NCBI GenBank assembly: GCA_977030845.1
Contig: OZ365110.1
Coordinates: 30,008,001-30,072,000 of the forward strand
Origin: Fimbriosthenelais zetlandica
Lineage: Eukaryota
Direction of reading: 5' to 3'
DNA length: 64,000 nt
Part shown: one piece after another, positions 9,873 to 62,388 of the stretch
Layout: every line of letters begins with the position of its first letter
Position numbering within the stretch: the stretch's first letter is position 1
The notes under the pieces: model-generated
The model's database searches: none
The model's input: the letters and a program-made list of their open reading frames with translations, nothing else
What the model was told of the DNA's origin: nothing
Program-made: the position numbers and the translations under genes

Positions 9873-10427
9873 GTAATATTGAATCCTCGTCGGCCAGATC
9901 GACATAAAAATAATAATATTATGGATCACAGAGATGACCCCTGTAAACCCCTGTCATTTGCGACAGCCTTATCTGACGCACGCCCACCATATATATCGGA
10001 CAAAAATATAATCATAAAATTAGGGGCACAAGCTATCACGAATTATCCTGTACTGTGATGTTTGTAACCACTCCATGTGGCAGCCTGCAGTTTGGGATCT
10101 TTAGGTATTCTTTTACCTTAAAATAATTAACATTACGTTCAGATGATACATTGTGTTATGTAGACGTTGAATTAAAAGTTTATTTAAAGTATTGTATTAA
10201 TTGCCTCCTTATATTATGACGAATTGTTGCGGTTTTTTTTTTGAATATAAAGGGCATATTCAACTACTTCGAACAACTACCTGTATGCTCCCCTGACATA
10301 ATCGTGACTGTTTACTGAGGTCCCCTGACATAATCGTGACTGACCACTAAGTTAGCTAGGCTCGCTGTACCCGATCGCACTGTCGCAATAATACTCTCCT
10401 AAAGGAAAATTACTGTAATTCGCCACC

Positions 10428-12650
10428 GACATACAGTGACTGACCACTAGTCCCCCAACATACAGTGACTGACCACTACGGCCCCCGACATACAGTGACT
10501 GACCACTACGGCCCCCCGACATACAGTGACTGACCACTACGGCCCCCAGACATACAGCGACTGACCACTACGGCTCCTGGACATACAGTGACTGACCACT
10601 ACGGCCCCCCGACATACAGTGACTGACCACTACGGCCCCCGACATACACTGGCAGACCGCTACAGTCCCCGACATACGGTGACTGACCGCTACAGTCCCA
10701 GACATACAGTGACTGACCACTACGGCCCCCGACATACACTGACTGACCGCTACAGTCCCCGACATACGGTGACTGACCGCTACAGTCCCAGACATACAGT
10801 GACTGACCACTACGGCCCCCCGACATACAGTGACTGACCACTACGGCCCCCCGACATACAGTGACTGACCACTACGGCCCCCCGACATACAGTGACTGAC
10901 CACTACGGCCCCCGACTTACAGTGACTGACCACTACTATCCTCCGACATACAGTGACTGACCACTACAGCCCCCCGACATACGGTGACTGACCACTACGG
11001 CCACAAACATATTGTAACTGACCACTACGGCCTCCCGACATACAGTGACTGACCACTACGGCCCCCGACATACAGTGACTGACCACTACGGCCCCCGACA
11101 TACAGTGACTGACCACTACGGCCCCCAGACATACAGCGACTGACCACTACGGCTCCTGGACATACAGCGACTGACCACTACGGCCCCCAGACATACAGTG
11201 ACTGACCACTACGGCCCCCAGACATACAGTGACTGACCACTACGGCCCCCAGACATACAGTGACTGACCACTACGGCCCCCAGACATACAGTGACTGACC
11301 ACTACGGCCCCCCGACTTACAGTGACAGACCGCTACAGTCCCCCGACATACAGTGACTGACCACTACGGCCCCCGACATACAGTGACTGACCACTACGGC
11401 TCCTGGACATACAGCGACTGACCACTACGGCCCCCAGACATACAGTGACTGACCACTACGGCCCCCAGACATACAGTGACTGACCACTACGGCCCCAGAC
11501 ATACAGCGACTGACCACTACGGCTCCTGGACATACAGCGACTGACCACTACGGCCCCCAGACATACAGTGACTGACCACTACGGCCCCCAGACATACAGC
11601 GACTGACCACTACGGCCCCCAGACATACAGTGACTGACCACTACGGCCCCCAGACATACAGCGACTGACCACTACGGCTCCTGGACATACAGCGACTGAC
11701 CACTACGGCCCCCAGACATACAGTGACTGACCACTACGGCCCCCAGACATACAGTGACTGACCACTACGGCCCCCGACATACAGTGACTGACCACTACAG
11801 TCCCCCGACATACAGTGACTGACCACTACGGCCCCCGACATACAGTGACTGACTACTACGGCCCCCCGACATACGGTGACTGACCACTACGGCCCCCCGA
11901 CATACGGTGACTGACCACTACGGCCACAAACATATTGTAACTGACCACTACGGCCTCCCGACATACAGTGACTGACCACTACGGCCCCCGACATACAGTG
12001 ACTGACCACTACGGCCCCCGACATACAGTGACTGACCACTACGGCCCCCGACATACAGTGACTGACCACTACGGCCCCCAGACATACAGTGACTGACCAC
12101 TACGGCCCCCGACATACAGTGACTGACCACTACGGCCCCCAGACATACAGCGACTGACCACTACGGCTCCTGGACATACAGCGACTGACCACTACGGCCC
12201 CCAGACATACAGTGACTGACCACTACGGCCCCCAGACATACAGTGACTGACCACTACGGCCCCCGACATACAGTGACTGACCACTACGGCCCCCAGACAT
12301 ACAGCGACTGACCACTACGGCTCCTGGACATACAGCGACTGACCACTACGGCCTCCAGACATACAGTGACTGACCACTACTATCCCCCGACATACAGCGA
12401 CTGACCACTACAGTCCCCCGACATACAGTGACTGACCACTACGGCCCCCAGACATACAGTGACTGACCACTACGGCCCCCAGACATACAGTGACTGACCA
12501 CTACGGCCCCCCGACTTACAGTGACAGACCGCTACAGTCCCCCGACATACAGTGACTGACCACTACGGCCCCCAACATACACTGACTGACCACTACTATC
12601 CCCCGACATACAGTGACTGACCACTACGGCCCCCCGACATACAGTGACAA
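10428..12650 (+). repeat. Minisatellite array A, 30-31 bp unit, ~70 copies
   Basis: Consensus GACATACAGTGACTGACCACTACGGCCCCC(C/A). Two degenerate units upstream at ~10289-10350. Confidence 0.97.
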
Positions 12651-14030
12651 TTGTAAGGTCCACCTACATACAGTGGCTGGCCACTACTGACCATTACTCA
12701 CATGTATAGTCCATGTACATACAGTGACTGACCACTACTCACCTGTATGGTCCCCTACATATAGTGACTGACCACTACTGACAATTACTCACCCGTATGG
12801 TCCACCTACATACAGTGACTGACCATTACCCACCTGTAGGAACCACGTACATACAGTGACTGACCATTACGCACCTGTAGGAACTACCTACATACAGTGA
12901 CTGACCACTACTCACCTGTAGGAACCATGTACATACAGTGACTGACCACTACTGACAATTACTCACCTGTATGGTCCACCTACATACAGTGACTGACCAC
13001 TACTCACCTGTATGGTCCACCTACATACAGTGACTGACCATTACTCACCTGTAGGAACCACCTACATACAGTGACTGACCATTACTCACCTGTAGGAACC
13101 ACGTACATACAGTGACTGACCACTACTCACCTGTAGGAACCACGTACATACAGTGACTGACCACTACTCACCTGTAGGAACCACGTACATACAGTGACTG
13201 ACCATTACGCACCTGTATGGTCCACCTACATACAGTGACTGACCACTACTCACCTGTATGGTCCACCTACATACAGTGACTGACCATTACTCACCTGTAG
13301 GAACCACGTACATACAGTGACTTACCATTACTCACCTGTAGGAACCACGTACATACAGTGACTGACCATTACTCACCTGTAGGAACCACGTACATACAGT
13401 GACTGACAATTACTCACCTGTATGGTCCACCTACATACAGTGACTGACCACTACTCACCTGTAGGAACCACGTACATACAGTGACTGACCATTACTCACC
13501 TGTATGGTCCACCTACATACAGTGACTGACCACTGCTGACCATTACTCACCAGTACGGTCCCCTATATACAGTGCCTGGCCATTACTCACCTTTGGTCCA
13601 CCTACATACAGTGACTGACCACTACTCACCACTACTCATTCGTATGGTCCACACAATTACTCACCTTATGGTCCTCCTACATACAGTGACTGACCACTAC
13701 TCACCTGCATGGTCCCCTACATACAGTGACTGACCATTACTCACCTGTTTGATCCACCTATATACAGTGACTGACAATTACTCACCTGTATGATCCACCT
13801 ACATGCAGTGACTGACAATTAATCACCTGTATGGTCGACCTACATACAGTGCCTGGCCATTACTCACCTTTGGTCATGCACCTACATACAGTGACTGACC
13901 ACTACTCACCACTACTCATTCGTATGGTCCACCTACATACTGTAACGTCACGACCACTACTTACAATTTCTACATACAGTGACTGACCACTACTCACCTG
14001 CACGGTCCACCTATATATACCGTGACTGGT
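12651..14030 (+). repeat. Minisatellite array B, ~41 bp unit, ~30 copies
   Basis: Consensus CCTACATACAGTGACTGACCAYTACTCACCTGTA(T/G)G(G/A)(T/A)CCA. Shares the core ACATACAGTGACTGACCAYTAC with array A. Confidence 0.95.
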
Positions 14031-53444: not shown

Positions 53445-56400
53445 ATGCCTCACAAAAGCCAGTAAGTATTTTTAATAATTTGTATAATGTTACATTTCTA
53501 TTTAATGAAATAGCTGCTCTAAATTTATTATTATATTGCCCAAGAATTTATTATGATCACATTAAAAATAATATCTGTTTAATACTATGAGTGGTTTACA
53601 CAAACCATTACTCAGCATATATTTTTATAAATTAATTATTTATCATATTCCATATTATTGTTCTGCAGGTTCGACCCCTTTCAAGTATTTGAGGTAGGCC
53701 TAATTTATTCATTTCAATTTTTCTTCTGGCTGATTGGAAATCTGGAGAATGTGTGTCACAATTATCTCCCAGAATGGGGTCCAGATGTAAAATGCTATCT
53801 GTATGCACAAGGGCGATGGCAGTCTCTTTAGCCTCTTGTGCAACACTTGATAAGCGTGTAATTCCTTATTGTGGGCAAAGTGTAGGTGCCAGGAGCGTGA
53901 CGCTATATGTTGCCATTGATACAAGACTCATTTGGTCAGACAACTCTTTTTCTGAGTCATGAAAAATATTGGCAATATTGGAATTAATAATCTGTCAGTC
54001 TCTTTGCTAATATATACCCAGTCTGTTCGTCAATTTTATAATGTCACGTTATTGATTCCATTATTGCGTGAATTTAGGTCAAGCATCAGTCTTGTTTGAT
54101 TCTTCACGTTTCCATCCTGTCAGGAAAAAATATCAGCAAAGGATGGATGTCGAATTTATGTAAGATAATTAAAAACATATATCTTATCATATTCTTTTGA
54201 GTTGTCGGGAGTATTTACTGGATATTTTTTGACATTTTATGTGATATTGTGTGTTATTATATAACATTTCTGTTCTTAGTTCACACGCCCTCCCCTGTGA
54301 TACAGCTGCACATGGCAGCAGCCGCAGAAACGACCCAGCGAACAAGGACTGGAGTGAGCGACGTAAACCCACGGTGGGACGAGACGTTTGTCTTCTATCT
54401 CGATCCCAAAAATGATAACATACTTGGTGGGTAGTAAAAAAAAATTGTTGGACATAATGATCATACATTAATTTTCACATTAAAGGTATTCACATATCAA
54501 TGAGATGATTATGACCTATAGCATAGCTGGGGATATATATATAGTGTCATAAAAGTATGCTCGAGTATCCTATATTATATGAGAACATGTCACTTATGAA
54601 ATAAACTACATGTACAGGGAACCTTTCATAAATGAGACTGGTGTACCTATTATCCGTCTGTCTACAGAGATGAGCTTATTTGATGAGCATGCATGGTATG
54701 GTGGAGACCTTGGTAAGATTGCCATCCGCTGTGGGGAGTTGGTTATAAACGAGACAGAACGAAGAACCCTCAGGTTTGCTGGGGTAGGCCTAACTATACA
54801 TTATTTGAATACAATAAAATTGCTCCAATCCAACTTTCTTGGTTACATTTCGTGTACAGTCCGTTCTCTCTAAGTTGATCCGAAACCACAGTACAAATGT
54901 ATGGTGGTTTCGGATCAACTTAGAGTAAACAGAGTGTAAGTAGAAATCATATCTTTTTCAGACATCAGAAGTTGACCTGAAGTTGAGGATAGACTTTGAG
55001 TGAGTCCTTGATATTATTTTTTCATTTGGGCTCAGATGAATCTCGTCAAAAAGGCATTTTATGTCAGATGATTTAGATCTAATGGAATGTGGTCTGTTTT
55101 GTTACTATTAATGGATTTTTATTTGTTTAATTCAGCACCAATCCAAGCCTGCGCTACAGCCTCTGCCTCTCACCGGAAGAGAAAGAGTATCGGAAGTCGC
55201 GGTGTGGCCGGACGGTAGAGGCGATTAAGCGTCTGCTCGGGGACAGGGCGCCCTCTAACGTCAACAAGGTGAGAGTTATGATCGATATTTTTTTTTATTA
55301 AAGACACTTCAAGAAACCAGTACCGCCATCCGGCGTTTTTTCAGGTGGTCTTACAAAAGGAAACCTTTATAATTTGACAAATTTCCCTACAGGATGTCAT
55401 ACTCATAGAGTGGTATTATTCGAACATATAAAATGAATAAAAATACGGTTCCGTCATTTTTGAGTCGTCAAGCATTGTTTTTGGAATGGGATAGCATTGT
55501 CCTATAAAACTGAAACTATGTAAAGTATGTACTTATATATCCTGATTTGCAGGTGCCAACTGTAGCAGTTCTTGGTTCAGGCGGTGGTTTTAGAGCAATG
55601 ATAGGCTTTGCCGGAGCATATAAAGCTTTGGTAGAGTCTGGCCTCCTAGATTGTACCATGTATACTGGATCTCTCTCGGGATCCTCATGGTGAGAATTTC
55701 TTTGTGAACCTTTGTCAAGTTAGGCTTACTGTCATCACTTTGTTTTATACAAATTTGTCCATCACCAATTTAAGCTCCACTTTTCACGATTGGGTTATAT
55801 TGATTGATAGGGATATATTTAGAAATAAGTCGATACTTACGTAGTATAGTTGAAGACGTAGCGCGAAGTATAATTATGTTTAGGCCTACAATTTGTAGCA
55901 ACTCGTCTATATACCTATAGAGTTTGACTATATATCTTATATTACTATTCAATATTTTCAGGTATTTGTCACAGTTATTCTCTCACCCTCAGTGGCCGTC
56001 TGGATCAATCGCTGAGATTAATGATGAGCTCCGAGCAAACGTTGACCACACCTTCCTCTGGCTACTCAAACCATCTGGTAAACTTTTACTTTACAACTCA
56101 TAATTAGCATATCCTTTCACTGTAGCCTATTATTCGTTCTACTTAACACATTCAATTTTCATGAACCACAATTTACCTGACTTGGTAGGTCCGGATTTAT
56201 CGACATTGATCAAAATCGTTAATTTTGCTGTCCATAATTTATAGTTCGTCTTTATTGCAGGTATGGTAAAATATGTAGATAAGCTTTTAGCAAAACGGGC
56301 CACTGGTATGCCTGTCAGCTTCACTGATTTCTTTGGCCACCTTGTAGGAGATACATTATTAAAAGGGGTAAGTTTAAAATTCAAAATTAAATCTTGTCAA

Positions 56401-59400
56401 TGTCAATGTACATGTAGGAATTTAAGCCGGCCACACCCATAGATGATGCTCCATAAACGGTAAGATCTCCCAACGGTAACGCACCTCTCGATCAGTCTCT
56501 GTAGCTAGACGATATAAAATTCGTGACTAACTTGGTCCGGTGCCAAAAGTCGCAATGTATATAGGCCTATAGAAATACTGACTGTACATTTATTGGAAAG
56601 TTTTGAACAGACGTATTCGCGGGCAGGGGATGATTTGGTCCTTTAAACCCCTAGATGCTCTTTATCAATGATGTCATATTCTATTTGTAGCGGATGACGT
56701 CACGTCTAAGCGATCAGCGAGAGCGGGTGCGGGAAGGAGCGACGCCACTGCCGCTCTATACGTGCGTCCATGTGAAGAAAGATGTCTCCGCAAGGGTTTT
56801 TCAAGGTGGGTAGTACATTAATGTACACAATTTCCCCCGTAAGATAACACTTGAAACACGTTCATTCATTCAATTTACATTTTTTGCATAAAAAGAGAAA
56901 AGCAAAAAACAGGTTGTAGACCGCATAGTCTGATTGGAAACTGTTTAAACTTTTCGTGTAGGTATAGGGTGATATTAGTAGACCCTATGTCTCCCCTATT
57001 AATATTGAATTTGCCCCTTAACATGATCACTGAATAAATGTCAAATAATTAATCATCATTCCCGCAGAATGGGTGGAATTTTCTCCCTTCGAGATTGGCA
57101 TGCCCAAATATGGCATCTTCCTGCAGTCACACCTGTTTGGCAGTCGATTCTTCATGGGCAAAGTGACCAAACAGTTCGAGGAACCACCACTTCACTTCCT
57201 ACAAGGTTTCTTAGTGTTCCTATTTGCCATTTGCCCTAAATTCCTTCCTTTCTCTTTTTTTCACCTCCTTTTATCCGTGTTCCTGTCGGAACATGGGTAG
57301 ATGGTTGCAATAATTATTGCCACGCCACGGGTAACTCCTTCGAAGAATATAACCCTTCCCTTATAGTAATTTTATGCATAGGGGCCTACTGTAGTTTGAA
57401 TAAAGGATTGGTGTATGATTTTTCTGACCTTTCATTTTCAGGAATCTGGGGAAGCGCCTTCTGTATCCTCTTCCGTAGATTATTAAGGAAATCCCACAAC
57501 GCCAGTCCTATGTATAAAGTGAGGAAAGAAATGGGTAAGTCCCTTATATCCTATATCCTATACCAGCTGGTTTTGGCTAAAAAAATGTATATACATGTGC
57601 CCTAGATGTAGGCCTATTTAATACCCAACTGAACACTATATAACTACACAAGGAGGTCCATCATAATATATACCATATTAATAAATTTAGTGTCTGTATT
57701 ATGTTTCCTGTAGAAGACAAGCTTGATCGTGAGTTTAAAAGATCACCTGCAAAGCGTCGCCACCCTATCCCGCCAGTCGGTTCCTCTTGCAAACGGCGGA
57801 AGTTGAATGATACGCACTATGAACAAACCGGAAGTCACAATCAGAGGAGCGGAAGTTTCTTGGAAACGCTCCTAGAAAAAGTTTGCACCAGGTACAATAT
57901 GAATAAATAATGTATGATATATCATTTGTAGACATCTAGGCCTATAATTATGTTCTATTGGATTCATTCTTGTCTTTCTGACAAAAACTAACGTCTCGAC
58001 CCCTACCCAAGATGGGATCGAGGAAAATCAACACCTTTTTAATAGGCCTATGCATCATAGCATGGCTTCAAAAGCCTAGTTATGTTCTTTCCGTTTGATT
58101 ATGGATTATCGTGATCTATAGGCTACTATGCCTATGTTTTTCACTATTCGTATGTTCGTATGACTTTATACTTCAGTTCTCGGTTCAGTATCCTGAGTAC
58201 ACGGACAGCAAGGTCTGGGGTGGTGCATAATCCTATGAGGGGCCTGGTGCTAGAAAAATCCTACCCTTTCTCTCCCTTCACCGCTAAAGTTAGAACCATG
58301 ACGCCCATATCTGCTACCGGTAGGCCAAATTTTATATTTATATGCTAGGCCCTTAGGTTATAGGCGATAGACAATAATGATACGTGTATAATGATGAGAC
58401 ATTAACTTTTATATTTACTGTTAGGCCTATATATATTCAGCTGCCCTGTTGGCATTTTCAAACATCTTTCTTGTGTTTCTAGATGAGTTTAAGAACATTT
58501 TTGACCTGCATCCAACCAGCGAAGAATACCAATATTTGGTAGATGCCGGCTTAACATTTAATTCACCCTACCCTCTTGTCCTCAGACCACAGAGATCTGT
58601 AGACATTATATTATCATATGACTTCTCAGCACGCCCTTCAGACACTGACCAACCATTCAAGGTAAGCATCCAATAACAATAAATCTGAACTTATACTTAT
58701 AATATGTAGGCCTATTGTTTTCAATTCACATACAGTACTTACATTACAGTTTCGGTTAAAACTCCTTTTCTTAATCACTTTTTTCATTTTAACCTTCAGG
58801 AGTTGAAGTTAGCGGAGAAATGGGCACGTCTGAATGGAGTCCCCTTTCCACCCATTGATGTTTCGGTGTGGGATCCAGCTAACCCTAGAGACCTCTTTAT
58901 TTTCCGACACCCCACTGATACTCGTTGTCCTGTCATTCTACACTTCGTCCTCATCAACCTTTCCTTCAGGAAATACAAAGCTCCGAGTGAGTTGATTTGA
59001 AAATCGGATTCCCTGCATGAGAAACGATTAAAAAATATTTTTTTTTATTTCCAACATTCTAGTTCCATTTACTAATAAAATTTGTATGCATGCATAGGCT
59101 ATTATTCATTAGGCCTAACCCTACTTACATTGCCTTTTCTGTTAAATTACACAGATGTACCCAGACAGACGGAGGAGGAATTGGAATTTGGAAATTTTAA
59201 CATTTTTGATGATCAATCTTCAACTTATTCCACATTCAAATTCACCTACACGCATTGTGATTTTAACCGCTTGAGTAAACTTATGGAATACAACACCCTG
59301 AACCACCTTGAGGATATTAAATCTGTGATAGTGGAGAGACTAGAGCAAAAACAAAAACCACAAAAATACTCCATCCCGATGAACAAGGACTTTAAACTAT

Positions 59401-59501
59401 TGCCTATGACGAAAGCAATGGACAGATTTAAATTAAAGAAAATCCACAAATTGATGAAAATCCAAGAAGAAATTTGTAGTCCGGTGGATTTGGCAGTTTA
59501 A
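53445..59501 (+). CDS. PLA2G4A: Cytosolic phospholipase A2 (group IV, cPLA2-alpha-like), 765 aa, 18 coding exons
   Basis: Exons 53445-53461, 53669-53693, 54078-54159, 54280-54426, 54668-54783, 54962-54999, 55136-55268, 55553-55689, 55962-56077, 56261-56367, 56691-56805, 57068-57205, 57442-57534, 57714-57891, 58177-58319, 58483-58661, 58800-58986, 59155-59501. All GT-AG, 2298 nt, frame open. N-terminal C2 domain (NPRWDETF); GSGGGFRAM oxyanion loop; SLSGSSW catalytic Ser; WVEFSPFEIG; GIWGSAF; YPFSP MAPK site; LVDAGL catalytic Asp; LRPQR; DFSAR. Confidence 0.95.
54855..54938. mobile_element. Palindromic MITE, copy 2 (in cPLA2 intron 5, opposite orientation to copy 1)
   Basis: TACAGTCCGTTCTCTCTAAGTTGATCCGAAAC ... 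GTTTCGGATCAACTTAGAGTAAACAGAGTGTA. The loop reverse-complements to CACCATACAT..., as in copy 1. Confidence 0.75.
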
Positions 59502-59828: not shown

Positions 59829-60900
59829 AGTCATTGTCCTAAAAGAGGCCCCATTAATAATTATTGTCTCTGTTGATGTGTTATCCCAGATCGGCCAAGT
59901 TCCAAATCCTTCCCGCGCGCATTATTTGCAGACGGTGGCGCCACGGTGGAGGCACTCCAAGTATTAGCCTACTACCGTTGTAACTGAGCTGACCTCTTAT
60001 AGCAGCGGGTGTTAAATTCTACCATTTTCACTAACCAATCTGGCAGGAGCTCACCCTCAAATATGCATTATTTAATCCCTTATTTTCTCGCCAAGTCTTC
60101 AATATTTCGTGTAACATTCAGCAGCAATGGATTCTAAATGTGTTTTTACATTGGCCTGTGGATGCACTGGGTAAGACGTTTATTCTTTTCGGTATAATTA
60201 ACGTAAAGTCTTCCAATGTTTGGGAAAATGTCTCGCCCTTTTGAAGCTTTTCTGCGAATGCACAGTGTTAGGCCTACTGTCGACCTGGGGCAGGCAGATA
60301 AGTGAGGTGGAGATCAGAGCATTAATCAATGGGATACTCTGATATTTTTATTCTTATCAAGATAGATTACACGATGTGTAGATAAGCCCCTGGATAAGTA
60401 ACCTGGTATCTAGGCCTATGACTATGTTATGTAACAAGAACAGACATGTTATCATTATCATGGAATATCAATAAGTCAAATAGAAATAGTAGGCCTACTA
60501 GGCATGCGATCATTCAAGGTACCGTATTTATCTTCACTTCAGTTCTGACTTATGACTATCCGTAACCTAGCCCTAGGCAGTGTATTCTGATAAGCCTTTA
60601 GGCATTTGTGGATGAATTTGTGCTTTTGCCTCCCCTGAAAGTTCTCATAAATTTATATTGACTGGATAGACCTGCGGCTGCACCCACCTTAGGCTACTGG
60701 TAGCTTGTAGGCTTTTCCTCGAGATGTAGGCCTAAGTTGTTTCTCGACTGATGTTCGGTTTGAACATATTGATTGACATACTAGAACTTTGGCTCCTGGA
60801 TAACAGGAATTGTTAAGAGTTATGTCCACATTGTCAAGTCATTGAACTGTCATTTTACATACGTTAAATTATATTGTCATTTTCAAATTGCGCTTCCAGA

Positions 60901-62388
60901 ATGAATTCATCTAAAGCACCATTGGTTACAATAAACGAATCAAGCGAATCACGGGATGAGGAGGACGATATAGGTGGAACAATTCCGGTTGCCCTCAGGT
61001 CCATAGAACAGTCATTGTTTGAGTCTATAGCAAAAGGCGACTGTGAGACCCTAAAGGAACTGATCAGGCTGGGTATTGACCTGAATGATGTCCGTGAGGG
61101 GGAGATTTCACCCATTATGTGCTCTGTAATGAGCCAGCGCCCCACCATTCTCAAGATCTTACTAGATGCTGGAGCAAAGGTGAGCATTGGAGACAACTGG
61201 GAGTCTCTACACTGGGCAGTGCACCTGGGTGATGTGGACTCAGCAAAGCTATTGCTGCAAGCAGGAATAAACCCAGACACAATTGATGCTGACAATTCCT
61301 GTTATACACCACTAACACGAGCGGCTAAAGCAGGTAATATATATGGCATGGTGTTAATAGAAACGCTCATACAACATGGATGCGCTGTTAACAAACAGGG
61401 ATTTATGGGCAACACGGCCCTTCACATTGTCCTGGAGGAAGGCATGTATGAAGCTGTGCCCTTGCTCCTGGAGAAGGGAGCAGACCCCAGCATTGAGAAT
61501 GATTTCAAACGGAGCTGTCTGGAGGTGGTGGTGAGTTCACAGGTAAATGCTGACCTCAAACTAGTGGCTCAGATCCTGGAGGTGTGCTGCCAGAAATGGA
61601 CGACTGAGGAGACGATGCAGTACCACCTGGATGGGGCTCTATATGCTGCAGTGAAGAAAGGTCGGACTGATCTGGTGGCGTTCCTTCTCAAGCATGGCGC
61701 GTCTCCTGAATGTGGATCCATTGGACCCCGCCGGGCAGAGAATGTCCTCCAGTTAACCTGTATCGCAGGTGACAATGTGGAGATGTTGAAACTCCTCATT
61801 GAAGCAGGTGTGCCTTTAAATGAACGAGACAGAAAACTGGCCTATCCCATCCACGCTGCCATAGAACACAGAAGACTGAAAACCCTCAAGTTATTTCTCC
61901 AGCTCGGTGCCAATCCTAACGTGCGGCGTTTTAAAGCCTTGGAGACACCGCTGATTTTGGCCATCAAAAGGGATTATGATGAGGGAGCCTTGGTTCTCAT
62001 TCAGTCTAACTGTGATGTGAACCAACCTGGATATGACAGACTCTCTCCTCTCTATTATGAAGGAGAGACTGTCATGCCGGTAGAGTTTGCCTTGAATCGT
62101 CACCGTTGGATCGTGGTCCGGGCCCTGGTTGTGGCCGGTTGTGACCGAGGTCCCATCAGAATCTGGCTTCAGCGAGTTCTCGAAGAAGGCTATGTGCATT
62201 ACGGAGAAGAAGCTATTCAGGAAGTAAGAAGTCTCATTTTCCAGCCGATGTCGCTGAAAGATCAAGCCAGGATCTTCATCAGAAATCGCTTCTCCAGCGG
62301 GTTGCTGAAACAAGTCCATCGGCTGCCCATCCCTCAAGTATTACGCAGCTTCGTCCTCATGAATGAATTCATTTCAGTGGAATATTAA
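60901..62388 (+). CDS. Ankyrin repeat and SOCS box protein (ASB family), ~495 aa, single coding exon
   Basis: About 10-11 ankyrin repeats (e.g. ESLHWAVHLGDVDSAKLLLQAG, NTALHIVLEEG, ETPLILAIKRD) and a C-terminal SOCS box PMSLKDQARIFIRNRF...VHRLPIPQVLRSFV. The track start at 60874 is a TTG inside a likely intron (donor 60171, acceptor TTCCAG 60899), so ATG 60901 is the probable start. Confidence 0.93.
   Translation: MNSSKAPLVTINESSESRDEEDDIGGTIPVALRSIEQSLFESIAKGDCETLKELIRLGIDLNDVREGEISPIMCSVMSQRPTILKILLDAGAKVSIGDNWESLHWAVHLGDVDSAKLLLQAGINPDTIDADNSCYTPLTRAAKAGNIYGMVLIETLIQHGCAVNKQGFMGNTALHIVLEEGMYEAVPLLLEKGADPSIENDFKRSCLEVVVSSQVNADLKLVAQILEVCCQKWTTEETMQYHLDGALYAAVKKGRTDLVAFLLKHGASPECGSIGPRRAENVLQLTCIAGDNVEMLKLLIEAGVPLNERDRKLAYPIHAAIEHRRLKTLKLFLQLGANPNVRRFKALETPLILAIKRDYDEGALVLIQSNCDVNQPGYDRLSPLYYEGETVMPVEFALNRHRWIVVRALVVAGCDRGPIRIWLQRVLEEGYVHYGEEAIQEVRSLIFQPMSLKDQARIFIRNRFSSGLLKQVHRLPIPQVLRSFVLMNEFISVEY

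What the first reader, a model, noticed from the sequence alone, without database searches (positions are those of the whole stretch)
54078..54783. cPLA2 C2 domain lacks most Ca2+ ligands but keeps aromatic loops
Seen: exons 3-5 give ...KGWMSNLFHTPSPVIQL...RTGVSDVNP...EMSLFDEHAWYGGDLG. These align without gaps to human ...KGAFGDMLDTPDPYVEL...RHFNNDINP...EITLMDANYVMDETLG (recalled). In human numbering the changes are D37N, D40H, D43S, N65S and N95H; only D93 remains. Known: D40, T41, D43, N65, D93, A94 and N95 bind the Ca2+ ions that drive translocation, and D43N abolishes it. Both loops remain rich in W/F/Y and the catalytic Arg/Ser/Asp are intact. Inference: a Ca2+-independent, constitutively membrane-docked or protein-recruited cPLA2-alpha-type enzyme that still has a C2 domain (cPLA2-gamma, by contrast, lost it).
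Basis: partly seen in the sequence, partly recalled or inferred. Interest (0 to 1): 0.75.

Follow-up and report, generated by a model that had tools for sequence, protein, structure and literature searches.

The report
Worm cPLA2 without calcium-binding residues
An intact cytosolic phospholipase A2 gene in this (probably annelid) genome has replaced four of the five calcium-binding side chains of its membrane-docking C2 domain, a second species keeps the same rebuilt loops, and so this normally calcium-triggered lipid-signalling enzyme has probably been rewired in this lineage.

Summary
Window 54078-54783 holds exons 3-5 of a 17-exon cPLA2-alpha-like gene with an open frame and GT-AG at every intron. 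Against human numbering the changes are D37N, D40H, D43S, N65S and N95H; only D93 remains. R200, S228 and D549 are kept.

This is not the usual invertebrate state. Among 118 homologues, D43 is kept in 118, D40 in 117 and N95 in 117. None has His at 40 or 95.

It is not decay either. An orthologue in a second, unnamed assembly (ENA ERZ25767047) has the same intron phases and shares H40, S65, H95 and the loop HAWYGG. Between the two species the C2 domain is as conserved as canonical C2 domains are. The pattern is a burst of change followed by renewed constraint.

The Owenia fusiformis homologue from the same spiralian clade still reads DANY in loop 3. A second, very divergent cPLA2 gene 6.2 Mb away keeps the Ca2+ ligands (DMPDPY). 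No alternative C2 exon exists in the window.

Best reading: a catalytically competent cPLA2 whose C2 cannot bind Ca2+ in the canonical way. "Constitutively docked" is untested. The His-His-Asp(-Cys/Ser) replacement might bind another metal or sense pH. No RNA evidence could be obtained. The scan had not noted this on other DNA.

The parts
53669..53693 (+). Exon 2 (provisional numbering): encodes FDPFQVFE, the conserved N-terminal lead-in of cPLA2. Exon 1 with the start codon was not identified.
   Evidence: AG/GT borders and frame. tblastn matches RFDPFQVFEV to mollusc and nemertean homologues. The same 25-nt exon occurs in the second species.
54078..54159 (+). Exon 3: the first C2 beta-strands and the first half of Ca2+-binding loop 1 (GWMSNL). 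Codon 54153-54155 (AAT) is Asn at human position D37.
   Evidence: The intron phase is identical in the paralogue and in the second species.
54280..54426 (+). Exon 4: the second half of loop 1 (F-HTPSPV) and loop 2. Codon 54282-54284 (CAC) is His at D40. Codon 54291-54293 (TCC) is Ser at D43. Codon 54357-54359 (AGC) is Ser at N65.
   Evidence: Gapless HMMER alignment to PDB 1RLW, 1CJY and 6IEJ. Pfam C2 at 27.2 bits..
54668..54783 (+). Exon 5: Ca2+-binding loop 3 (LFDEHAWYGGDLG) and the following strands. Codon 54682-54684 (GAT) is the retained D93. Codon 54688-54690 (CAT) is His at N95.
   Evidence: Identity to the second species' exon 5 is 55%, with D-x-HAWYGG-x-LG invariant.
54962..55268 (+). 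Exons 6 (54962-54999) and 7 (55136-55268): the end of the C2 domain and the C2-catalytic linker (NPSLRYSLCL...).
55553..55689 (+). Exon 8: the GSGGGFR oxyanion/Arg200 motif and the nucleophile elbow, which reads SLSGS here (G226S; S228 kept).
   Evidence: Pfam PLA2_B at E 4.8e-9.
55962..58319 (+). Exons 9-15 of the catalytic domain: 55962-56077, 56261-56367, 56691-56805, 57068-57205, 57442-57534, 57714-57891 and 58177-58319. They include the retained S505-P506-type site (FSPF).
   Evidence: All introns are GT-AG and the frame is open. tblastn to homologues is.
58483..59501 (+). Exons 16-17 and the last exon: 58483-58661, 58800-58986 and 59155-59501 with the stop codon. They carry D549 (VDAGL), R566 and the charge reversal K543E in the basic cluster.

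Best explanation
The window carries a functional cPLA2 gene of the spiralian 'clade B' type. Its catalytic domain is ordinary and probably active. Its N-terminal C2 domain has had the canonical double Ca2+ site removed. In the canonical enzyme, Ca1 is held by D40, D43, D93, N95 and the A94 carbonyl, and Ca4 by D40, D43, N65 and the T41 carbonyl. Here the positions read H40, S43, S65, D93 and H95. The change arose on the stem of a lineage that includes at least one other species, and the new loops have been held under normal purifying selection since. Most likely the enzyme no longer uses the canonical cytosolic Ca2+ rise to bind membranes. The loops keep their hydrophobic and aromatic tips, and their net charge is about -4. 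Canonical loops average about -6.3 when Ca2+-free, which two bound Ca2+ ions would bring to about -2. The domain therefore plausibly binds membrane, or a partner, without Ca2+. Control would then pass to other inputs, such as the retained Ser505-Pro-type site. A second, divergent cPLA2 gene in the same genome keeps the Ca2+ ligands. Shown here: the sequence state, its rarity, its conservation and the intact catalytic residues. Inferred: loss of Ca2+ binding, and the mode of membrane targeting.
For: The gene model has 17 exons, GT-AG at every intron and no stop or frameshift. The ligand pattern is NHSSDH. The 118 homologues read DDDNDN (71), DDDNEN (40), DDDDEN (4), NDDNDN (2), DDDNDD (1) and DYDSDN (1). 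WIN departs from the >=95%-conserved residue at 6 of 16 C2 columns and 8 of 128 catalytic columns (Fisher p = 0.0013). The six C2 departures are D37, D40, D43, Y45, N65 and N95. The fold-core columns V12, G33, P42, P44, T60, P69, W71, E73, F75 and L91 are kept. The second species (ENA ERZ25767047, loci L015 and L018) has the same exon phases. Its loops read I-HTPCPC, INSQTNP and TDSHAWYGGELG. WIN and this orthologue are sisters at 100/100 support, with a stem of 0.50 and tips of 0.30 and 0.29, inside a spiralian clade supported at 100/97. Their C2 identity is 52.3% at a catalytic identity of 72.5%. That is the 44th percentile of 480 canonical pairs with similar catalytic identity. Against canonical homologues, however, their C2 identity lies 2.1 SD below expectation. 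The Owenia fusiformis homologue of the same spiralian clade (sister to WIN with only 90/65 support, unresolved) keeps RDANY in loop 3. Ligand roles come from PMC6550875. D43N abolishes translocation and raises the Ca2+ requirement to millimolar (PMC2133140).
Against: No transcript evidence was available: no RNA or DNA run was listed. Exon 1 and the start codon were not found. No binding or localisation data exist. D93, E94, D66 and two His residues remain in the loops, so weak or non-canonical metal binding is not excluded. In the human enzyme, neutralising D43 gives loss of docking, not constitutive docking. The nucleophile elbow departs from consensus (G226S). K543, which is Lys in 116 of 118 homologues, is Glu here. 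Activity or lipid activation could therefore differ. The Owenia exons 3-4 were out of reach, so the ancestral state of loops 1 and 2 within annelids is inferred from other phyla.
Confidence: 0.68

Rival explanations
1. Metal or pH switch. The former Ca1 site has been converted into a His-His-Asp site with Ser or Cys at position 43. The C2 domain would then bind a transition metal such as Zn2+, or respond to pH through His protonation, instead of Ca2+.
For: Positions 40 and 95 are His in both species, and in none of the 118 other homologues. D93 is kept in both. Position 43 is Ser in the window and Cys in the second species, which also has Cys at 45. In the solved structures the side chains of residues 40, 43, 93 and 95 converge on one ion at 2.1-2.7 A (Table 1 of PMC6550875).
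Against: This is purely geometric and compositional inference. No structure model or binding test was run. Ser43 and Val45 in the window protein are poor Zn ligands. Two conserved His residues could equally act as hydrogen-bond or structural replacements.
Confidence: 0.15
2. The C2 domain no longer binds membrane at all. It is kept as a structural or protein-interaction module, and targeting is done by another protein or by the catalytic domain.
For: The human D43N mutant does not translocate. Canonical phosphatidylcholine binding needs Ca4 and Ca-PC to bridge the phosphate, plus N65 and Y96. N65 is Ser here, and loop 3 is rebuilt. The cationic groove residues 57 and 58 are not basic. The C2 fold-core columns are conserved.
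Against: The loop tips keep the normal hydrophobic and aromatic load. The loop sequence HAWYGG is invariant between the two species, which suggests the loops are still an interaction surface. The catalytic-domain basic cluster is also weakened in the window protein (K543E).
Confidence: 0.2
3. Relaxed selection. After duplication the Ca2+-sensing role passed to the paralogue, and this copy's C2 domain is drifting towards loss, as happened in cPLA2-gamma.
For: A paralogue with the ligand residues D37, D40, D43, N65, E93 and N95 lies at G000:C10:23.848-23.855 Mb. The WIN/REL clade has a long stem branch.
Against: C2 identity between the two species is at the median of canonical pairs. Ten of the 16 C2 columns conserved at >=95% are intact; all six that changed lie in or beside the Ca2+-binding loops. 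The remodelled loop residues themselves are conserved. All exons and splice sites are intact in both species. The paralogue is the more divergent copy, with an end branch of 1.95.
Confidence: 0.05

Closest known systems
Vertebrate cPLA2-alpha (PLA2G4A; PDB 1CJY, 1RLW, 6IEJ)
   Same: Both have an N-terminal C2 domain followed by a PLA2_B catalytic domain. Identity is about 45-50%. R200, S228, D549, the GGGF motif, R566 and the Ser505-Pro site are all present. Exon 4 aligns without gaps to the solved C2 domains.
   Different: Four of the five Ca2+-ligand side chains are replaced (H40, S43, S65, H95). D37N and Y45V are further changes. Loop 3 is rebuilt as HAWYGG. The nucleophile elbow reads SLSGS. 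K543 is Glu.
Spiralian 'clade B' cPLA2-like genes (molluscs, the nemertean Tubulanus, the annelid Owenia)
   Same: The window gene belongs to this clade (95/88 support, 100/97). Catalytic identity is about 60-63% to Owenia and Tubulanus.
   Different: All sampled members keep D40, D43, N65 and N95, with D or E at 93. Owenia's loop 3 reads RDANY.
Human cPLA2-alpha D43N and D43N/D93N mutants
   Same: A key bridging ligand is removed. Position 43 contacts both Ca2+ ions (PMC2133140, PMC6550875).
   Different: The laboratory mutant loses translocation and needs millimolar Ca2+. The natural variant changes four ligands at once, together with the neighbouring loop residues, and is evolutionarily maintained.
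cPLA2-gamma (PLA2G4C)
   Same: It is a group IV PLA2 that works without Ca2+-driven C2 docking (own knowledge).
   Different: Gamma has no C2 domain at all (own knowledge; it is lipid-anchored). The window protein keeps a conserved C2 fold.
Naturally Ca2+-ligand-deficient C2 domains, e.g. synaptotagmin IV/XI C2A (Asp to Ser) and novel-PKC C2 (own knowledge, not tested here)
   Same: A C2 fold is retained while acidic ligands are replaced, and the replacement is conserved across species.
   Different: These are different protein families. None is a phospholipase, and the His/His replacement pair is not a feature I know from them.

Membership tests
Group IV cytosolic PLA2 (C2 + PLA2_B) | PLA2_B (PF01735) catalytic domain | tested here: met
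   PF01735 hits exons at 41.5 and 37 bits in the genome search. It also hits single exons at E 4.8e-9 and 1.6e-7. Full-length identity to named cPLA2 proteins is 46-51%.
Group IV cytosolic PLA2 (C2 + PLA2_B) | Catalytic Ser228/Asp549 dyad, Arg200 and the Gly197/Gly198 oxyanion hole | tested here: met
   All are present, and the columns are invariant in 117-118 of 118 homologues. Note that G226 of the GLSGS motif is Ser here.
Group IV cytosolic PLA2 (C2 + PLA2_B) | N-terminal C2 domain | tested here: met
   Exon 4 scores 27.2 bits against Pfam C2 (cut-off 22). HMMER hits the cPLA2 C2 structures at E 1e-9. Ten of the 16 C2 columns conserved at >=95% are kept.
cPLA2-alpha type (Ca2+-translocating) | Ca2+ ligand side chains D40, D43, N65, D93 and N95 | tested here: not met
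   The positions read H, S, S, D and H, so only D93 is kept. Ligand roles come from PMC6550875.
cPLA2-alpha type (Ca2+-translocating) | Phosphatidylcholine-selectivity residues N65 and Y96 | tested here: inconclusive
   N65 is Ser. Loop 3 reads DEHAWYGG. A gapless register puts Ala at position 96, whereas MAFFT places the Tyr at 96 after a two-residue shift.
cPLA2-alpha type (Ca2+-translocating) | Ca2+-dependent membrane translocation and activity | not testable with these tools
   This needs ITC, liposome binding or GFP-translocation assays.
cPLA2-alpha type (Ca2+-translocating) | Orthology with vertebrate PLA2G4A | tested here: inconclusive
   The gene falls in a spiralian clade (B), distinct from a second mollusc clade (A). 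Both relate to the chordate PLA2G4A clade, but the deep nodes are weak (80-89 support).
Ca2+-independent C2 domains | C2 fold lacking the acidic ligand cluster, with the lack conserved between species | tested here: met
   Loop net charge is -4 (WIN) and -3 (second species), against -6.3 +/- 1.05 in 118 homologues. H40, S65 and H95 are shared by both species.
Ca2+-independent C2 domains | Measured absence of Ca2+ binding | not testable with these tools
   This is a biophysical assay.

The most novel reading that the evidence does not exclude
The canonical Ca1 site of a cPLA2 C2 domain has been converted into a conserved His40-His95-Asp93 site, with Ser or Cys at position 43. This would make the domain a Zn2+/transition-metal-dependent or pH-gated membrane switch. 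That would be a change of the triggering ion in a classic Ca2+ effector, kept alongside a paralogue that retains the Ca2+ ligand residues.
Probability: 0.15. Interest if true: 0.75.

Novelty: new variant of a known kind. Interest (0 to 1): 0.5.

Why it matters
cPLA2-alpha is the textbook case of a C2 domain turning a Ca2+ rise into membrane docking and arachidonate release. [quoted passage not shown]

This lineage is a natural experiment in three respects:
- The catalytic machinery and the C2 fold are kept.
- The ion site is replaced, and the replacement is then conserved.
- A second gene in the same genome keeps the Ca2+ ligands.

If the loops still bind membrane, the case shows how much of C2 docking is electrostatic neutralisation and how much is ion bridging. 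If the two His residues bind another metal or sense pH, it would be a new input into eicosanoid-type lipid signalling in spiralians. If neither holds, it is a lineage-specific regulatory rewiring of modest general interest.

Tried and rejected
- RNA or DNA read support: two run searches listed none.
- Three word-indexed protein searches with mixed profiles, built from window, paralogue and Owenia exons plus full-length guides. They returned molluscs, a nemertean, chordates and others, but no full-length annelid protein. The window's own protein is not in that collection.
- Exons 3 and 5 alone against the PDB: no C2 hit.
- Alternative or mutually exclusive C2 exons: tblastn with six C2 domains, plus a D-x-P-D-P-type motif scan of all six frames of the 64-kb window, found only the single exons 2-6.
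- Exon 1: no conserved upstream exon between the window and the second species.
- Metagenome scan for the LxDxHAWY and IxCxELV patterns: no confirmed relative.
- Owenia exons 3-4: they lie outside locus L014 and could not be reached.
- First tree: the paralogue grouped with a cnidarian (Xenia) and was flagged as long-branch attraction. Its position is unresolved with the mixture model.
- Structure prediction of the spliced C2 domain: not run. A spliced protein has no reference form, and long sequences may not be typed.
- Assembly error or chance as an explanation: rejected. Five independent codon changes sit in three exons, and a second species shares three of them.
- Papers: two full-text searches found no description of a cPLA2 with a ligand-less C2 domain.
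Full report
**1. What is at the coordinates**

The window is G000:C10:30008001-30072000 of a 447-Mb eukaryotic genome. An earlier follow-up of this scan called the genome annelid.

On the + strand, from 53669 to 59501, I could assemble a cPLA2-like gene of 17 exons. The frame is open throughout and every intron is GT-AG. It encodes 759 residues plus an unidentified first exon.

The finding's span, 54078-54783, runs exactly from the start of exon 3 to the end of exon 5. They join across split codons as GWMSNL-F-HTPSPV and NDNIL-E-MSLFDEHAWYGGDLG.

**2. Register against the human enzyme**

- Exon 4 aligns without gaps to the solved cPLA2 C2 domains 1RLW, 1BCI, 1CJY and 6IEJ (E 1e-9 to 7e-8). T41 is on T41, Ser is on D43, and Ser is on N65.
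- Exon 4 passes the Pfam C2 threshold on its own.
- Exons 3 and 5 are too short and too divergent to hit the PDB alone.
- Their register follows from a 120-sequence alignment. It also follows from identical intron positions and phases in the paralogue and in a second species.

The result is D37N, D40H, D43S, N65S and N95H, with D93 kept. Y45V and A94E are further changes.

According to the DHPC-bound structure paper, Ca1 is held by D40, D43, D93, N95 and the A94 carbonyl. Ca4 is held by D40, D43, N65 and the T41 carbonyl. Ca4 and a third ion bridge to the phosphatidylcholine phosphate (PMC6550875). D43N abolishes translocation in cells (PMC2133140).

**3. Is it unusual?**

Yes. In 118 homologues that span the C2 domain, the pattern at positions 37, 40, 43, 65, 93 and 95 is distributed as follows:

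| Pattern | Count |
|---|---|
| DDDNDN | 71 |
| DDDNEN | 40 |
| DDDDEN | 4 |
| NDDNDN | 2 |
| DDDNDD | 1 |
| DYDSDN | 1 |
| NHSSDH (window protein only) | 0 of 118 |

The homologues come from molluscs, nemerteans, a chiton, amphioxus, vertebrates, a priapulid, arthropods, a cnidarian and a flatworm. No homologue has His at position 40 or 95.

Of 144 alignment columns conserved at 95% or more, the window protein departs at 14. Six of these are among the 16 conserved C2 columns, and eight are among the 128 conserved catalytic columns (Fisher p = 0.0013). The six C2 departures are exactly D37, D40, D43, Y45, N65 and N95. The conserved fold-core columns V12, G33, P42, P44, T60, P69, W71, E73, F75 and L91 are kept.

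The catalytic departures are mostly conservative. Two are notable:
- G226S in the nucleophile elbow, so that GLSGS becomes SLSGS.
- K543E. Lys543 is present in 116 of 118 homologues and is part of the basic cluster next to the active site.

R200, S228, D549, G197/G198, R566 and the S505-P506 site are present.

**4. Is it decay?**

No. One hit from the last-exon search was an ORF on a 5.45-Mb contig of ENA assembly ERZ25767047. Walking along that contig reached the C2 exons of a clear orthologue. It has the same 25-nt exon 2 and the same intron phases.

Its loops read GGWVADL-I-HTPCPC, RPINSQTNPQW and D-ITLTDSHAWYGGELG. It therefore shares H40, S65, D93, H95 and the rebuilt loop 3, HAWYGG. Position 43 is Cys rather than Ser.

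On a catalytic-domain tree (LG+C20), the two are sisters at 100/100 support. The stem is 0.50 and the tips are 0.30 and 0.29. The pair sits inside a spiralian clade supported at 100/97.

Their catalytic identity is 72.5% and their C2 identity is 52.3%. That C2 value is the 44th percentile of 480 canonical pairs with similar catalytic identity. In contrast, the C2 identity of either protein to canonical homologues is 2.1 SD below expectation. Control sequences scored between -0.65 and +0.3.

This pattern is a burst of C2 change on the common stem, followed by ordinary purifying selection on the new state.

**5. When and where it happened**

The Owenia fusiformis gene (locus L014) is split into two gene models in the public annotation. 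It is the closest named relative in the catalytic domain, at 63% identity. Its loop 3 is canonical, reading RDANYLQD. Its exons 3-4 lay beyond the fetched locus. Its sister relation to the window gene has only 90/65 support and is unresolved in the second tree.

The change is therefore derived within the spiralian clade, most simply within annelids. The taxon of the second species is unknown.

**6. Paralogue**

Searching the genome itself with PF01735 and with window exons finds exactly one other locus, at C10:23.848-23.855 Mb on the minus strand, 6.2 Mb away.

- Its C2 domain has the same intron phases and reads GKLRDK-F-DMPDPY, CDNTKTPEW and LELWEDNVV. The ligand pattern is DDDNEN.
- Its elbow is GVSGS.
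- It is very divergent: about 44% catalytic identity to the window gene, with an end branch of 1.95. Its position in the tree is unresolved.
- A 69%-identical last exon in another data set, Logan ERR14368249, indicates that this paralogue is also maintained in at least one other data set, probably another species.

**7. Other refuters**

No alternative C2 exon and no D-x-P-D-P-type motif occurs in any frame of the 64-kb window. No sequencing run could be listed, so expression and splicing are untested.

**8. Mechanism**

Shown: the canonical ion ligands are gone, while the fold core, the loop length and the loop hydrophobicity are kept. The loops hold 4 aromatic and 7 hydrophobic residues, against family means of 3.5 and 7.0. 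Their net charge is -4 in the window protein and -3 in the second species, against -6.3 +/- 1.05 for the family.

Inferred: the domain cannot bind Ca2+ in the canonical mode. The enzyme is therefore uncoupled from the canonical micromolar Ca2+ trigger.

Whether the loops dock constitutively is open. The reduced negative charge and the conserved W/Y tip favour it. The D43N phenotype, and the loss of ion bridging to the phosphate, argue against it.

The side chains at positions 40, 43, 93 and 95 converge on one ion in the solved structures. They are H, S or C, D, and H in both species. A change of metal, or a pH-sensing role, is therefore a reasonable minority hypothesis.

**9. Comparison and novelty**

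By domain content and catalytic residues this is a member of the group IV cPLA2 family. It fails the Ca2+-ligand criterion of the alpha type.

As far as I know, Ca2+-ligand-deficient C2 domains are known in other families, such as synaptotagmin IV/XI C2A and the novel PKCs. cPLA2-gamma lacks the domain altogether.

Two full-text searches found no description of a cPLA2 that keeps a C2 domain stripped of its ligands. [quoted passage not shown]

I rate it a new variant of a known kind, of moderate interest. It would rank higher if the His pair proves to be a new ion or pH switch.

Noticed in passing
G000:C10:23847900-23854600 (minus strand; loci L009-L011): This is a second cPLA2-like gene in the same genome. 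It is very divergent (about 44% catalytic identity). It keeps the Ca2+ ligands (DMPDPY, N65, E93, N95) and has a GVSGS elbow. A 69%-identical last exon exists in Logan run ERR14368249.
   Followed up: partly
window 55680-55689 and 58540-58560 (codons for G226S and K543E): The nucleophile elbow reads SLSGS instead of GLSGS; the second species has GALSGS. Lys543, which is Lys in 116 of 118 homologues, is Glu in the window protein but Lys in the second species.
   Followed up: partly
window 56078-56260: This intron splits what is a single exon in both Owenia (L014:3369-3587) and the second species (L018:11569-11874). That implies a lineage-specific intron gain here, or parallel loss in the others.
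   Followed up: no
window 60868-62385 (+): A single open frame of 506 codons encodes ankyrin repeats followed by a SOCS box, so it is ASB-like. It lies 1.4 kb downstream of the cPLA2 stop codon.
   Followed up: partly
window 10426-13910: Two adjacent minisatellites lie here. One has a 31-bp unit in about 72 copies (10426-12648, 90% matches). The other has a 41-bp unit in about 29 copies (12686-13910). They explain the GC-rich, strongly C-skewed block seen in the composition profile.
   Followed up: partly
L014 (Owenia fusiformis CAIIXF020000012.1:32119844-32141135): The public annotation splits one cPLA2 gene into two models, of 571 aa and 320 aa (P0004). The exons are collinear with the window gene.
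   Followed up: partly
P0123 (Ladona fulva) and P0142 (JGI metagenome protein): Two other cPLA2-like proteins show partial loss of ligands. The dragonfly model reads KPSPY and LMDKR. P0142 has the pattern DYDSDN. These may be independent smaller losses or gene-model errors.
   Followed up: no
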